Shown one piece after another: positions 2,467 through 10,700 of a DNA stretch of 11,700 bases (position 1 is the first letter of the stretch; the number at the start of each line of letters is the position of its first letter). The translations under genes were made by a program, and so were the position numbers. This DNA comes from Chlorokybus atmophyticus (taxonomy: Eukaryota; Plantae; Mesostigma and Chlorokybus algae): assembly GCA_009103225.1 (NCBI GenBank), contig RHPI01000230.1:1-11700 (forward strand), read 5' to 3'. The notes under the pieces were generated by a model, which was not told the origin of the DNA, ran no database searches, and saw only the letters and a program-made list of their open reading frames with translations.

Positions 2467-2985
2467 CTCTCATAAAGCTTTGCAATTGAGCTCTGTTGCT
2501 TTATATGCTTGCTTTGGCATGTTATAGCGAGCCTGCAACCTTATGAAGTTTTCTTCCTACATTCGTATAAATATTATCTATATATTGGTTGAGTGATAGT
2601 TATTGATCTTGTATGTATCTTATATAACCTTAATTAAACAACTCTGCAGAAGTTGGCTACTTCAAATTAAATTAGAATGATAATTTACTTCAATGAGTTG
2701 ATGCTTTTATTATATTTGATGATAATTAGGTACTGCTAAACTTCATTCGCTTTGAGATCAATTACCAATTATAATTGTTAAAGTGATACATATTTATAAA
2801 ATGCTTAACACTATTGCTGAATGCAGCAACAATGCTTGCGTTAAAATGTTAACACGCAAATGCAAACAATCTCAAAGTTTTTTGTAACACTGGTATGAAA
2901 CAACGTGTTGAGATGTTTGATATTGAGTATCGTTGTATTCTCACAAACCCGGCAAGTTGATTACAATCCAACGAATATGTTTCTA

Positions 2986-3026
2986 AGTCTGTTGCTAACA
3001 AACGGAGTCTGTTGCTAACAAACGGA
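2986..3026. repeat. Exact 20-bp tandem duplication
   Basis: AGTCTGTTGCTAACAAACGG at 2986-3005 and 3006-3025, plus one further matching base. Confidence 0.95.
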
Positions 3027-3450
3027 TGTACATATGTTCATGCAAATTGGTGATTACTGTTAAGTACATATTACGCGCATAGCTGTATTATTGATGCGTG
3101 TACTTGGAACTTGCAACAACTTACAGCATGAGGGGCTGGTGTAGCGGTTTAAGGTTTATGGTTTTTTATATATGAGAGGCAGCGGACTGTAATGGCCAAC
3201 CAGATGTGGTGTACACAAGGAACCCTCGCGGGCCTTAACAGTCGAGCCATGCACTTTACCTAACACCAAGGGCTTCGCTAGCATCATTTGATCTTGCCTG
3301 GTTCCTACCCCCTCCTCCCTCTGATTCAACTAGCGCACATAGAATTGAAGTAGTGGGGCGCCCACCGAGTGTGATATTGCTCACTGTTTGCTTGTATCCT
3401 TGTGATTGTGCAAGCCTACCTAGTCCGACTGACTGGCCCATTTCTAATTT

Positions 3451-3455
3451 TTACA
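3451..3455 (-). promoter_or_regulatory. Putative TGTAA polyadenylation signal of the TMEM249-like gene
   Basis: TGTAA on the minus strand about 115 nt after the stop codon at 3569. UGUAA is the established chlorophyte poly(A) signal. Confidence 0.55.
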
Positions 3456-3568
3456 ACTAGATGCTATATTGTAACACGCTTCTCGCTTCAATACAAGTCA
3501 CGGGTTTACGACTCGTATTGTCGCCACATCATGCTCTCTTCAAAATCTCTTGCAACATCATGCGGGAG

Positions 3569-4706
3569 TCATGTTGCTTTTTGTGATAACGCTGGGTTGC
3601 TGTATCGTATTGAATCTGCATATGTGCACCATTGTTGATGAAACGCATTGCATGCACGACAAGGCATAAACAGCACTTGCAATATTCGGTGTTGTGTAAG
3701 CTTTGCCATGAAGCATGCACACCAATACAAGCACTTGTGCTTTCTCTATGATTGCAATCATCACCAACTTACGATGCATGGAAATGTTGGCCTCATCAAA
3801 GTAATTCACATCCAGCCTCTTTGCCAAAGCCTGTCCCAAACTGCGCATCTCCTGCATACAACAAATTATAAACACCTATGATACCATCACTTCAACTGCT
3901 GCAATAAGACCCCCCCTCCCTTGCTTGGTTGTGCGCCACTTCACATGCGACAGGCATGCTATGCACACGCGTGCATGCATGAGAACCATACCTCCAGGCT
4001 ATCTGAATAACCCCAAGTCAGATACACTGTCTCCAGCTCGTTCCCCCCAAACGTCAACTGGTACTTTGGCTTCTTGCCCGGCGCTGCACCTAAATCACAC
4101 GACAATATACTGAGCAAATGCTCTGTGCAGCACAACAAAAACAATAACCACAATTACATCAAGAAGTACAACAACCAGCACAACAATGACGACAACAACC
4201 TCACCAGCGACTGCCCTGAGTTGGACGTAAACGTTCCACCACTCTCCGGAAGCAGCCTCCTGGCCGCCAACCAGGAGTGTGTATCTGCCTTGGGGGTGGT
4301 GTTCTGACCCTCTCTTGGGCGACGCCAACAAGGAGGAGGAGGCGGCGGCGGCGAAGGAGGAGGACGAGGCGGAGGTGAGGAAGGATGAGGGCCCCTCCAG
4401 CAGGACGGTCCTGGCAAGGCGGTAGCCCCACGCCAGGGGTAGGCAGGCGACGATGACCAGGAGGCAGGCGGCGAAGAGGAAGGCGTCGGCCTGGCCGGCG
4501 GCGGCGAAGGCGGTGGCGGCGACGGCGGCGGCGGCGACGATGGCGACGCAGGTGTAGAACGCCGCCGGGCGGTAGGTCAGCGTGAAGGCGCCCTTGCGGC
4601 GTCCAGGCAGGCGGACGAAGGGAGCCACGTGGTTGCCCTGCAAACGATGAGCGTACGCCTCGTGCGTCGATACTAGCGGCCACACCGCTGGCACAGCCAA
4701 ACGCAT
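3569..4706 (-). CDS. TMEM249: TMEM249 / CATSPER-theta-like (DUF4579) two-transmembrane protein, 241 aa, 4 exons
   Basis: Exons 4706-4205, 4089-3992, 3851-3773 and 3615-3569, all GT-AG with consistent phases (726 nt). The protein has collinear blocks AHRLQGNHVAPFV, FTLTY, two hydrophobic helices, GRYTLLVGG..SGEWWNVYVQL, YQLTFGGNELETVYL and LGQALAKRLDVNYFD..HHSIR. These parallel human TMEM249 as I recall it (ARRLKNNSFYPFV, FVLEY, 2 TM, GVYHFSIQG..QGPLHLVYVRL, FHLVLGGHRLEPLVL, LGRYIARKLNINYFD..RHVVR). The last exon is the least certain. Confidence 0.8.
4130..4200 (-). repeat. Imperfect (GTT)n/(CAA)n microsatellite in intron 1 of the TMEM249-like gene
   Basis: Runs of caacaa/acaacaa on the plus strand between donor 4204 and acceptor 4090. 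Confidence 0.8.
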
Positions 4707-5101
4707 CACCGCCGCCGCCGCCGGTGCCGGCGACAACACCGCGAGAGGCGAGCGATGCCGCGAAGTCACGTGACCACACTGGAGCGTATCGTGAATTGCG
4801 TATTGGCGTTACGTTAGCTGAATAATCGCAGTATCTCTGATGCGCGAAGTCACACTGGTGGTTATAGCAATGGTTGTGCTGCAATGCTATCACAGCTTCT
4901 GAGAATCTGACTTATACCTACTGCGCACAGAACCTTGTTGTGTAGTTTGTGCTGTACATGCACACATAACAGACACATACACATGCACTGGAAAACAAGC
5001 CGCTGCGCGTGACAAGGAGGTCAAAGTCGATAACTCGCGTGCAACCTACTCGTACCAATGCAGCATGCCTTTCATCAGTTGCTAATCATAAACCAGCAGT
5101 A

Positions 5102-7719: not shown

Positions 7720-10700
7720 TTATTGTCCGTCTGTTATGGCCTCAGGAGCTTCATGTTGCAGCTTGTCCACCGGCTCTTCCGCATCCTCCTGCTTGGTCAG
7801 CTCCATGAACTCCGCAGTGAGCTGTAAGAAACGTTACCACATTTGTGTTCATACCAGAGCACAAGTGTGCATGCATGGTAGCACGTGCGAGGTAGCGCAC
7901 ATGTGCACGGTAATCCCTGCAATTGCACAACATAGCACATCAACATACCTGTTTAATGACTTCATCAGAGGCGTCTGCGCCCGCAGCCTCAGCCCTCGCT
8001 TGGTCCTTCTTGGCCTTGGCCTTCATCTCTTTGGCCCTGGCCTCAAGGTTGCGCTCCCTCTTTGTCTCCCTTTCAAACATCTGCACATGCCCAACGTTTG
8101 ATGATGTATGCTACTCCTGCAGCAAGACACGACAATCACGTGTAACGCATGCGCACCTGACTGATGCTTTGCTTTTCCCCTGCCTGCAACACAGCGAGAC
8201 CGTCGCACAGATTCAACAACGTTGTGGACCCATCACGCGCACCCGCCGCCATGAACTTGCCAGTGTGATCCACTTTGAATGCAGACAACCCACTCTCGTT
8301 GACCTGCATTGGCGCAAAGTAAGCATGCACGCAGGCAGGCACACACACGCACGCACACATAGGCACGCACAAGTGCACGCGCACTCGAATATACATGCCT
8401 TTGTACAAGCATTGGTACATAATATTCTTGATGCTAGCTCAAAGCAGCCATATGCATTGCAAACAGCAGAGCTGAGAGCGTTGTCTTACTTGCAAGGTGA
8501 GGGCAGGGTCGTTCTGCTTGTAGAAGTAGTCCCACACATCCAATGTGCCATCTGCTTTTGTCGTGAAGAACACGCCTGGGCGTGTGGGTGACCAGGCGCC
8601 CGCCGTGACATAAGATGAGCTGCAAGAGCACCAGCCACCCCATCAGCAAATCCAACATGCAAGTGGGCACACAACCAAGTGTGGCTATGGGTTTTATACC
8701 TGTATCGTGTCGTCATCACCGCGGCTCTCAGGTCCTCCATCCACACTCGCGCCGTCCAGTCACCCGCAGACAGGAAGTACTTGGGGAATGTTGGGTGGCG
8801 TTGGAGGGAGAGGACGGGTGCGTGGTGGCCAGTATAGGATGCACCGATGCGGTCCTGAAAAGTCCAACCAGTTAGATGCATACAGAATATGTTGTGTGCA
8901 AGGGCATAAGTTCTCTGTGCAATAGAGTACTGCTTGCCTGCGGGTTCTTGGCTTTCCTGTTGCAGGAAAGGATGATACCCTGTTCTGTTCCAACCATGAA
9001 CTTGGAAGGACCCGCCACGGCCTCGTACTCCATACTCACCTGTTGGAAGGCAGGTGCAATCAGACAACCACAATATGACACAATGGAGCGAGCATACCCA
9101 CATACACCCACATACCCGCAAACTTCCGCACTTACCGCCCCAAGCACTATGTTACTGCCCTTTTCTTGCAAGAGCAGCGACTCCACAGGCTCACCCAGTC
9201 TCCTTGTATCCCACCTAAAACAGCGAGGTCATCGCACATCTGACGTTGTGTCTTGGGCTCATAATACTCACTGTCAAAACGGCCATGTACGCACCAGTGA
9301 ATGTTGCCGTCTGTTGAACAGCTGGCGCACTCGGTGGCCGTCTTGCTCTGCAGCCACGTGACGTCATACACGGGGTCGCGGTGCGATCGTTCAATGGGAG
9401 AGGCGTCCATTGCGGCCGAACCCTTGCGCGCATCCCACCAGGCAACCTGTGTATGTTGTGACAACGGTGCGCTTGGTGTTGTGTGTTTCAGAGGTGCAAG
9501 GGAGACTGCAGTCTGTACCTGGCCATTGTACTGTCCTCCGGCGATGATGTTGGGGTCGCGGGGGTTGTACACGGCGCAGCAGAGCTGAGATGAGGGTGAG
9601 AGCTCCAGCTCGGGGAATGTTGGGTTTGAGACGTCCCATATGTACGATGGCATCGACGTTCCTTCTGGTACACCCTGTTGTGCGCATCACATAGACATAC
9701 ACGACCACACCCCCACCGCAACTATGTCAGTGCTATAGTTTGCACCACTGGTCAATTCAACAAAGTACGTTCTGCTGGTACCTGGAATGCCATGATACTG
9801 TATGCTACTGCAATCTTTCGCCCAGCATCTGGATACCTGTTCACACGTGGTAGTTTATTCTGTTGTCGTTAAAGCATCATATCTGTCGGTGTCTGTTGAA
9901 GCCATTATGTTAAACAAGCTATCCTTACCATGAGATGTAGTTGGCCTGTCTTGTCCCTGCTGGTCCCGAAGTGCATGGGTCTCGGAACACGGTGAGCGTC
10001 TTCGCGGTAGGCGCCTCGCTCGAATGGTCCGCTGCAGCGCCCTTAAAGTACTCCTCGTAGATGTCAATCGCGTTGTTCTGGCGCACAAGCTCTTCCACCT
10101 GTCACCGCCATTCAGAAAGTTCGACAACCATGTCATTGCATGCCGCCAAGACATTACAACGCTTCCACTTAAACAACTGTACTCAAACCAATACCCACAC
10201 CCACACGCGCACCCACACCCACACACGCGTGTGGGCGCACGCGTACACACGCAGCAAACGTGGCACTGCAGTTGGATCCAAGCTGGTGCACTGGCTAAGA
10301 CTGTAAGCGTGCAATAAATGTTGCATGTATCTGACGTAGGCACCCTCCTTCATACGCAAAGGCGTGCCGTGCGGGGGTGTGTGGTGGGGGGTGGTTGGGG
10401 TGGTTAACATGTTGCTAGAGCCTGCATGTACCATCCATCTCGCAGAGCTATACTTACCTGGCATAATACATGGTTACCAACTCTGCACAACAACTCTCCC
10501 TACCTGAACCCCCAACTTGACGATGGTCTTGATGTACTCTTCATCCTTCTCGACCTTCCGCCGCCACCTAATCACGTGCTCTGCCTCCGACGCGTCCACG
10601 TCCTTGGGCCAGCCGCCTTCTGTGTGAAGCAGGCCTTGGGACACGTAAGCCTGGCGCTCCGTGTTCACCTAACAACACATAATACAGATCAACACCGCTA

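What the first reader, a model, noticed from the sequence alone, without database searches (positions are those of the whole stretch)
3569..4706. Green-algal homologue of the sperm CatSper channel subunit theta (TMEM249)
Seen: a 4-exon gene splicing to 241 aa with two TM helices and six collinear motif blocks, ending LGQALAKRLDVNYFD. It is invisible in the ORF track because it is split over three unrelated-looking ORFs. Known: TMEM249 (CATSPER-theta) is a component of the mammalian sperm-flagellar CatSper Ca2+ channel complex, needed for its assembly. To my knowledge, CatSper pore subunits are not described in Chlamydomonas reinhardtii, although they occur in scattered unicellular eukaryotes. 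Inference: this alga either has an unrecognised CatSper-like flagellar channel, or theta has an older, CatSper-independent role, for example with another flagellar Ca2+ channel.
Basis: partly seen in the sequence, partly recalled or inferred. Interest (0 to 1): 0.88.

Follow-up and report, generated by a model that had tools for sequence, protein, structure and literature searches.

The report
CatSper-theta (TMEM249) gene in Chlorokybus
An early-branching relative of land plants, the alga Chlorokybus, carries an intact and expressed copy of TMEM249, the small membrane protein that helps assemble the sperm-tail calcium channel CatSper in mammals. This suggests the channel's machinery is far older than animals and survives in the plant lineage.

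Summary
A four-exon minus-strand gene (CDS 3569-4706, all introns GT..AG) splices to 241 aa. That protein is identical to the public JGI Chlorokybus atmophyticus model, so the alga is a streptophyte, not Chlamydomonas. RNA contigs from two independent studies carry all three splice joints exactly.

The protein matches Pfam PF15158 (TMEM249) at E 4.5e-17 over nearly the whole profile. It keeps every invariant family residue and hits only mouse TMEM249 chains in the PDB. Its AlphaFold model (pLDDT 87) best matches mouse CATSPER-theta in the CatSper dimer (Z 9.8, 164/168 residues) and human TMEM249 (TM 0.73/0.75).

It is a divergent member: a very long branch, a private 35-aa Ser/Ala-rich insert and a degenerate N-terminal motif. 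No other green-lineage kin was identified among 59 homologues in 1.84 billion representatives. Those whose source I could identify come from flagellated eukaryotes of many supergroups.

I could not search this genome for the pore subunits. Unchecked notes of this scan report CatSper1-4-, beta-, epsilon-, tau- and EFCAB9-like genes in it. The most likely role is assembly scaffold of a CatSper-type zoospore flagellar channel; this is inferred, not shown.

New member of a known family. It is already auto-annotated, and no held paper names CatSper and Chlorokybus together.

The parts
3291..4933 (-). Transcribed region (mRNA at least 1231 nt after splicing)
   Evidence: RNA contig X1 (1231 nt) lies on 3300-3615, 3773-3850, 3991-4086 and 4202-4933, with 9 more letters beyond 3300. 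X2 covers 3437-4231 with the same joints.
4707..4933 (-). 5' UTR, 227 nt, without any upstream ATG. In-frame stops lie at 4811, 4889 and 4892.
   Evidence: The ATG at 4706 is the first AUG of the transcript.
4205..4706 (-). Exon 1 CDS (residues 1-167 plus 1 nt), GC 0.69. It encodes the N-terminal helix, the first beta strand, the TM hairpin, the insert and the first strands of the cytosolic domain.
   Evidence: Pfam hit of this ORF alone to profile positions 5-119.
4500..4565 (-). TM helix 1 (residues 48-69)
   Evidence: AF2 helix 48-69. Kyte-Doolittle 19-residue windows score above 1.8.
4425..4481 (-). TM helix 2 (residues 76-94)
   Evidence: AF2 helix 76-94. Hydropathy up to 2.58.
4290..4394 (-). 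Lineage-specific Ser/Ala-rich insert (residues 105-139), predicted disordered
   Evidence: Of the 21 of 42 family rows displayed, only two others (P0004, P0039) have residues in these alignment columns. pLDDT is 51-60 here.
4090..4204 (-). Intron 1 (115 nt, GT..AG, phase 1)
   Evidence: joint 4086/4202 with cut +3.
3992..4089 (-). Exon 2 (residues 168-200)
   Evidence: It holds the invariant G183.
3852..3991 (-). Intron 2 (140 nt, GT..AG, phase 0)
   Evidence: joint 3850/3991 with cut +1.
3773..3851 (-). Exon 3 (residues 201-226 plus 1 nt)
   Evidence: Pfam hit of this ORF alone to profile positions 151-177.
3795..3839 (-). Signature block LGQALAKRLDVNYFD (residues 205-219): the C-terminal helix of the PH-like domain plus the invariant N-Y-F-D
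   Evidence: Invariant N216, F218 and D219; near-invariant G206, A210, L213 and Y217. Helix 199-213 and strand 216-218 in the model.
3616..3772 (-). Intron 3 (157 nt, GT..AG, phase 1)
   Evidence: joint 3615/3773.
3569..3615 (-). Exon 4 CDS (residues 227-241 and the TGA stop at 3569-3571)
   Evidence: The near-invariant H227 and the HSIRY stretch align with mouse HVVRH.
3291..3568 (-). 3' UTR (about 278 nt) with one TGTAA at 3455

Best explanation
This is a genuine, intact and transcribed TMEM249/CATSPER-theta family gene of the streptophyte alga Chlorokybus atmophyticus. It encodes a 241-aa protein with a two-helix membrane hairpin and a cytosolic PH-like domain, one strand of which lies before the hairpin. 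Those points are shown here. By analogy with mouse CATSPER-theta, I infer that it works as an assembly scaffold and checkpoint for a CatSper-type four-subunit Ca2+ channel. The mouse protein binds the cytosolic part of the pore subunit CATSPER4, self-associates at the CatSper dimer interface, and is needed for the complex to leave the cell body for the flagellum. In this alga the channel would sit in the flagellar membrane of the biflagellate zoospores. The family dates back to early eukaryotes. Chlorokybus would have kept it by vertical descent while the other green-lineage organisms represented in the protein collections lost it.
For: Gene structure and splicing. Family membership: PF15158 at 62.9 bits, E 4.5e-17, profile positions 6-181 of 184. 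phmmer against the PDB returns only mouse TMEM249 chains 7eeb_J and 9ubw_J, E about 1e-8. All five invariant and ten near-invariant family columns are kept. The AF2 model has pLDDT 87.1 and pTM 0.79. The best solved-structure match is 9ubw_J, CATSPER-theta in the mouse CatSper dimer: Foldseek E 5.6e-5, TM 0.71 by target; VIA Z 9.8, rmsd 3.1 A over 164 of 168 residues. The best Swiss-Prot model is human TMEM249, E 4e-15, TM 0.73/0.75 over 236 columns. Function in mammals: Huang et al. 2023, PNAS (PMC10523455; preprint 10.1101/2023.03.17.532952). They found Tmem249 by its co-evolution with Catsper1-4, b-d and Efcab9 across 1,256 eukaryotic genomes, and showed CATSPER4 binding, self-interaction and loss of the whole channel in knockouts. 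The alga keeps flagellar machinery: an outer-arm dynein IC2 gene lies on the same contig, matching 7kzm_E at E 3.5e-32. Leads not tested here: scan notes report CatSper1-, 2-, 3- and 4-like, beta-, epsilon-, tau-like and EFCAB9 genes elsewhere in this genome, three of them followed up as intact and transcribed.
Against: I could not verify any CatSper pore subunit in this genome myself, because no seed sequence was available by reference. The protein is the most divergent family member seen: terminal branch 2.78 against a median of 0.81, odd composition, at most 30-35% identity to any homologue, the N-terminal NPxYPF motif degenerated to NHVAPF, and a 35-aa disordered insert. It may therefore have changed partner or be under relaxed constraint. 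The transcripts come from bulk cultures. I did not establish the life stage sampled, and expression in zoospores is not shown. The fold is shared with other membrane-complex assembly factors (EROS/CYBC1, Ycf4, GPI15), so the fold alone does not dictate CatSper as the client.
Confidence: 0.62

Rival explanations
1. It is a true TMEM249 homologue that works independently of CatSper. It would be a general two-TM plus PH-like chaperone or scaffold for another membrane complex, for example one of the four-domain voltage-gated channels of this alga.
For: The fold is shared with EROS/CYBC1 (chaperone of NOX2), Ycf4 (photosystem I assembly) and GPI15. The matches are 8kei_D at Z 5.3 over 141 residues, and Ycf4 and CYBC1 models at E 1e-3 to 1e-2. 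The atlas features also point to the Cybc1_Eros family. The protein is strongly diverged. Scan notes list several four-domain voltage-gated channels in this genome (unchecked).
Against: TMEM249 was discovered because its presence and absence track the CatSper genes across 1,256 eukaryotic genomes. Scan notes report many CatSper subunits in this same genome. No CatSper-independent role is described in the papers read.
Confidence: 0.2
2. It is a decaying relic: still transcribed and spliced, but no longer under selection for the ancestral function.
For: Very long terminal branch and deviant amino-acid composition. A low-complexity insert and a degenerate N-terminal motif. No other green-lineage homologue was identified.
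Against: The reading frame is intact across four exons with canonical splice sites. The first AUG of the mRNA is the start codon. All invariant residues are kept. The model is confident outside the insert, with pLDDT 90 or more at 170 residues. The transcript is present in two independent studies.
Confidence: 0.08
3. It is not an algal gene by descent: either a contaminant contig or a recent horizontal acquisition from another eukaryote.
For: It is the only green-lineage member identified. Its nearest homologues are protists of other supergroups, at 35% identity or less.
Against: The same contig carries an outer-arm dynein IC2 gene whose best solved relatives are the Chlamydomonas protein. RNA contigs labelled with the same organism in two studies eight years apart hold the spliced transcript at 99-100% identity. 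No close donor exists: the best identity is 35% and the tree gives no supported sister.
Confidence: 0.02

Closest known systems
Mammalian CATSPER-theta / TMEM249 (Pfam PF15158; mouse chains 7eeb_J and 9ubw_J; human Q2WGJ8)
   Same: About the same length (241 aa against 235 in human and 242 in CUG-initiated mouse). The same order of parts: N-terminal helix, beta strand, two-TM hairpin, cytosolic PH-like domain ending in the LGxxLAxxLxxNYFD helix-strand block and the HHxxR(H/Y) motif. Full-length fold match: Z 9.8 to 9ubw_J and TM 0.73/0.75 to human.
   Different: About 20% identity over the full-length structural alignments, 31-32% over the C-terminal domain alone (7eeb_J; mouse AFDB model). 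It has a 35-aa Ser/Ala-rich disordered insert after TM2, NHVAPF in place of NPxYPF, an ordinary AUG start rather than CUG, and it is in a plant-lineage alga. The partners, flagellar location and role are untested.
TMEM249 homologues of flagellated protists and zoosporic fungi (Cyanophora, Rhodelphis, Mantamonas, Diphylleia, Gefionella, Lapot, Mastigamoeba, Ploeotia, Ancoracysta, Syssomonas, Allomyces, chytrids)
   Same: The same family and architecture. They are the best sequence hits, at E 1e-14 to 1e-9 and 27-40% identity.
   Different: All are uncharacterised 'hypothetical proteins'. They lack the insert and sit on much shorter branches.
EROS/CYBC1 (PF15169), Ycf4 (PF02392) and GPI15/PIG-H: two-TM plus PH-like assembly factors
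   Same: The topology (TM hairpin plus PH-like domain) and a role in assembling a multi-subunit membrane complex. Weak fold matches: 8kei_D at Z 5.3, AFDB matches at E 1e-3 to 1e-2.
   Different: No sequence-level match: Pfam returns only PF15158. TM-scores are 0.3-0.45. The clients differ (NOX2, photosystem I, GPI-GnT).

Membership tests
TMEM249 / CATSPER-theta (PF15158) | Score above Pfam's gathering cut-off with near full-length profile coverage | tested here: met
   62.9 bits against a cut-off of 25, E 4.5e-17, profile positions 6-181 of 184, residues 17-230.
TMEM249 / CATSPER-theta (PF15158) | Reciprocal specificity: searches with the protein return TMEM249 first | tested here: met
   phmmer against the PDB returns only the TMEM249 chains 7eeb_J and 9ubw_J. 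The top Swiss-Prot model is human TMEM249. Named hits include vertebrate 'cation channel sperm-associated auxiliary subunit TMEM249'.
TMEM249 / CATSPER-theta (PF15158) | Two transmembrane helices forming a hairpin near the N terminus | tested here: met
   Model helices 48-69 and 76-94. Hydropathy windows score 1.8-2.6.
TMEM249 / CATSPER-theta (PF15158) | Cytosolic globular domain with the conserved family residues (NYFD block and others) | tested here: met
   Invariant Y160, G183, N216, F218 and D219 are present, as are near-invariant P29, R99, Y142, R162, G206, A210, L213, Y217, S224 and H227.
TMEM249 / CATSPER-theta (PF15158) | Same three-dimensional fold as the solved subunit in the CatSper complex | tested here: met
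   9ubw_J: Foldseek E 5.6e-5, TM 0.71 by target. VIA Z 9.8, rmsd 3.1 A, 164 of 168 residues, the only full-length match.
TMEM249 / CATSPER-theta (PF15158) | Co-occurrence with CATSPER1-4 pore genes in the same genome | not tested
   No CatSper seed sequence was available by reference, and the genome cannot be searched with these tools. Only unchecked scan notes exist (s1-194298, s1-078828, s1-078795, s1-186315).
TMEM249 / CATSPER-theta (PF15158) | Physical association with CATSPER4 and self-association at the channel dimer interface; flagellar localisation | not testable with these tools
   These are defined experimentally in mouse and need biochemistry or imaging in the alga.
EROS/CYBC1 (PF15169) and Ycf4 (PF02392) | Sequence match to the family profile | tested here: not met
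   The Pfam scan at E up to 10 lists only PF15158 and a chance-level DUF6232 hit. The similarity is at fold level only.

The most novel reading that the evidence does not exclude
Chlorokybus retains a near-complete CatSper complex: four pore subunits, beta- and epsilon-type ectodomain subunits, theta, EFCAB9 and tau. Together with the TMEM249 homologues found here in glaucophytes, Rhodelphis, euglenids, malawimonads, CRuMs, Rhizaria, Provora and Amoebozoa, this would make CatSper an ancestral eukaryotic flagellar Ca2+ channel rather than an innovation of the apusozoan-animal-fungal lineage. Chlorokybus zoospores would be the only known plant-lineage setting in which to study it.
Probability: 0.5. 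Interest if true: 0.75.

Novelty: new member of a known kind. Interest (0 to 1): 0.6.

Why it matters
CatSper is usually treated as a sperm channel of animals. [quoted passage not shown] Another notes that land plants such as Arabidopsis lack it and asks for more plant species to be surveyed (PMC5406480). An intact, expressed theta subunit in the earliest-diverging streptophyte clade, with homologues in many other supergroups, pushes this assembly factor back towards the last eukaryotic common ancestor. By its published co-evolution with the pore genes, the channel probably goes back that far too. It also implies loss along the line to the other green-lineage groups in the collections. This gives a testable prediction: Chlorokybus zoospores steer with a CatSper-type channel. 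It also provides a minimal, very divergent theta sequence showing which residues are truly indispensable. No paper in the searched library mentions CatSper together with Chlorokybus.

Tried and rejected
(1) The word-indexed profile search with alignment A1 scored only the 8000 most word-rich candidates and returned 7 proteins. It was useless for mapping the family's range.

(2) A scan of JGI metagenome contigs with P0001 gave 79 pattern matches, none confirmed by tblastn.

(4) A maximum-likelihood tree of 46 family members left Chlorokybus unplaced on a very long branch. It says nothing about vertical or horizontal origin.

(5) I looked for a TMEM249-CatSper fusion or neighbour among the long hits. 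P0018 (Sorochytrium, 1031 aa) is TMEM249 joined to EML-type WD40 propellers, probably a merged gene model. P0059 is a bacterial false positive.

(6) Cai et al. 2014 (PMC4169769), the key paper on CatSper distribution, is not held.

(7) I could not search this genome for CATSPER1-4, beta, gamma, delta, epsilon, eta or EFCAB9.

(8) Contamination or horizontal transfer was considered and rejected; see the rival explanations.

Full report
**What is there.** The stretch 3569-4706 holds a minus-strand gene of four coding exons: 4205-4706, 3992-4089, 3773-3851 and 3569-3615. The three introns are GT..AG, in phases 1, 0 and 1 (sequence; splice reconstruction). The 726-nt CDS gives 241 aa. The mechanical ORF list splits this over ORFs 4095-4769, 3959-4153, 3558-3875 and 3569-3730. 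That is why the gene does not show up as one ORF. The spliced protein is identical, residue for residue, to a public model, P0001 (eukprot jgi/Chlat1, Chlorokybus atmophyticus), which already carries a precomputed PF15158 label. The organism is therefore an early-diverging streptophyte alga, not Chlamydomonas.

**Transcription and splicing.** Four RNA runs labelled with the same organism were found. Assembled contigs of two of them, from different studies (X1 from 2021, X2 from 2013), lie on the window. Their joints skip 3616-3772, 3852-3991 and 4090-4204, with CT..AC ends on the plus strand, which is GT..AG on the gene's strand. X1 shows no differing letters and X2 shows one. The X1 contig of 1231 nt runs from about 3291 to 4933. 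That gives a 227-nt 5' UTR without any upstream ATG and a 3' UTR of about 278 nt. These are contigs, so they show presence, not expression level or life stage.

**Family membership.** The separate ORF pieces give only collinear sub-threshold Pfam hits to TMEM249: 17.1 bits to profile positions 5-119 and 20.2 bits to 151-177. The spliced protein scores 62.9 bits, E 4.5e-17, over profile positions 6-181 of 184, against a cut-off of 25. phmmer against all PDB chains returns only mouse TMEM249, in the CatSpermasome (7eeb_J, E 1.1e-8) and in the CatSper dimer (9ubw_J). That alignment runs across the exon 3/4 joint.

An exhaustive phmmer search of 1.84 billion representatives found 59 proteins at E 1e-3 or better, the best at 35% identity. 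I aligned 42 of them. In that alignment the alga keeps all five invariant columns (Y160, G183, N216, F218, D219). It also keeps the ten near-invariant ones.

Its peculiarities are:
- a private 35-residue Ser/Ala-rich insert (residues 105-139);
- NHVAPF where the family has NPxYPF;
- an Ala-rich, GC-rich first exon (GC 0.69 against 0.38-0.55 in the later exons).

**Structure.** AlphaFold2 with that alignment gives pLDDT 87.1 and pTM 0.79. Confidence is low only at the N-terminal tip, the insert and the last residue. The predicted elements, in order, are:
- a helix at 14-24 and a strand at 40-45;
- TM helices at 48-69 and 76-94;
- a beta-rich domain at 99-104 and 141-190;
- a helix at 199-213, a short strand at the NYF motif, and a C-terminal helix.

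The best solved match is chain J of 9ubw, CATSPER-theta in the mouse CatSper dimer. Foldseek gives E 5.6e-5 and TM 0.71 by target. VIA gives Z 9.8 and rmsd 3.1 A over 164 of 168 residues, and this is the only full-length match. Among Swiss-Prot models, human TMEM249 is first, at E 4e-15 and TM 0.73/0.75 over 236 columns. Weaker matches follow: EROS/CYBC1 (8kei_D, Z 5.3), Ycf4, GPI15 and many PH domains. The atlas search also brings up the Cybc1_Eros family and bacterial two-TM/PH-like proteins. The fold is thus a TM hairpin plus a PH-like domain, a plan shared by several membrane-complex assembly factors.

**Distribution.** The hits whose source could be read are listed below.
- Archaeplastida: Cyanophora paradoxa, Rhodelphis marinus.
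- CRuMs: Mantamonas, Diphylleia.
- Other protist groups: Gefionella (malawimonad), Lapot (Rhizaria), Mastigamoeba (Amoebozoa), Ploeotia (euglenid), Ancoracysta (Provora), Syssomonas (Holozoa).
- Zoosporic fungi: Polychytrium, Polyrhizophydium, Allomyces, Sorochytrium, Sanchytrium.
- Animals: a ctenophore, an annelid and vertebrates.

No other green-lineage protein was identified. About half of the hits come from unnamed assemblies, and gene callers may miss such a small split gene, so this is no proof of absence. In a tree of 46 members the alga sits unplaced on a terminal branch of 2.78 changes per column, against a median of 0.81.

**What is known of the family.** Huang et al. 2023 picked out Tmem249 because its gains and losses track Catsper1-4, b-d and Efcab9 over 1,256 eukaryotic genomes. 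They showed that CATSPER-theta binds CATSPER4 through cytosolic parts and self-interacts at the dimer interface. Its loss leaves the channel stuck in the cell body. A 2026 structure paper confirms the knockout phenotype. On the age of CatSper the literature differs. One review places its origin before the unikont/bikont split and notes its absence from Arabidopsis. [quoted passage not shown] No held paper names CatSper together with Chlorokybus. The few that mention it with Viridiplantae or Archaeplastida were not about such a gene, judging by their titles and by the passages I read in two of them.

**How it most likely works.** Shown here: a real, spliced, transcribed gene whose product is a TMEM249 family member by sequence and by fold. 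Inferred: it scaffolds a CatSper-type channel destined for the zoospore flagella. The inference rests on three things. The first is the published co-evolution. The second is that the alga has flagellar machinery: an outer-arm dynein IC2 gene lies about 3.2 kb upstream on the same strand. The third is notes of this scan, which I could not test. Those notes report CatSper1-like, CATSPER2, CatSper3-like and CatSper4-type genes in other pieces of this genome. They also report beta-like, epsilon-like and tau-like genes and EFCAB9. Three of the eight were followed up as intact and transcribed. These notes raised my odds for the CatSper-bound reading from about 0.4 to about 0.6.

The main rival is a CatSper-independent assembly role. 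The EROS/Ycf4-like fold and the strong divergence keep it alive, and scan notes also list four-domain voltage-gated channels as possible clients. A decaying relic is unlikely, given the intact frame, the conserved key residues and the confident fold. Contamination is unlikely, given the neighbouring green-type dynein gene and the two independent transcriptomes.

**Verdict.** It is a new, very divergent member of a known family, already auto-annotated in public data but not discussed in any paper I could find. Its value lies mainly in what it implies, together with the other reported subunits, about the antiquity of CatSper and its survival in the plant lineage.

Noticed in passing
window 8136-10343, minus strand (ORF fragments 9147-9653, 8486-9121, 8136-8420): A multi-exon gene for the flagellar outer-arm dynein intermediate chain IC2 (IC70/DNAI2). 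Its best solved relatives are Chlamydomonas 7kzm_E and 8glv_Ac (E 3.5e-32) and human DNAI2. It lies on the same strand, upstream of the TMEM249 gene, so two flagellum-related genes sit in tandem.
   Followed up: partly
model of P0001 (window 3569-4706): The TMEM249 fold (TM hairpin plus PH-like domain) resembles EROS/CYBC1, Ycf4 and GPI15/PIG-H, all of them assembly factors of multi-subunit membrane complexes, and also bacterial two-TM/PH-like proteins. This may be one ancient 'assembly scaffold' fold class. The similarity is at fold level only (Z about 5, TM 0.3-0.45).
   Followed up: partly
proteins P0003, P0004, P0006, P0008, P0010, P0012, P0016, P0026, P0057 and others: TMEM249 homologues occur in glaucophytes, Rhodelphis, CRuMs, a malawimonad, Rhizaria, Amoebozoa, a euglenid and Provora. 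That is a much wider range than the 'Apusozoa plus animals plus fungi' origin given for the CatSper complex in one review (PMC7935092).
   Followed up: partly
P0018 (Sorochytrium milnesiophthora KAL7749060.1, 1031 aa): A TMEM249 domain (residues 8-157) is joined to EML-type WD40 beta-propellers in one predicted protein. This is probably two merged gene models, but a real fusion is not excluded.
   Followed up: no
P0048 (JGI metagenome sample 3300045300, contig of 1171 bp): A 43-aa fragment is 62% identical to residues 202-233 of the Chlorokybus protein. It is the closest relative found and may come from a related alga. Its DNA was not retrievable.
   Followed up: partly
window 2501-3000: A GC trough (0.31, against 0.45-0.60 in most of the window) lies downstream of the gene's 3' end. 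Its content was not examined.
   Followed up: no
window 4513-4543 and 4706-4729: High-depth RNA contigs of run X4 touch only these short GC-rich (GCC-repeat) stretches and then run on unlike the window. They are most likely chance matches of other transcripts to low-complexity Ala-coding sequence.
   Followed up: no
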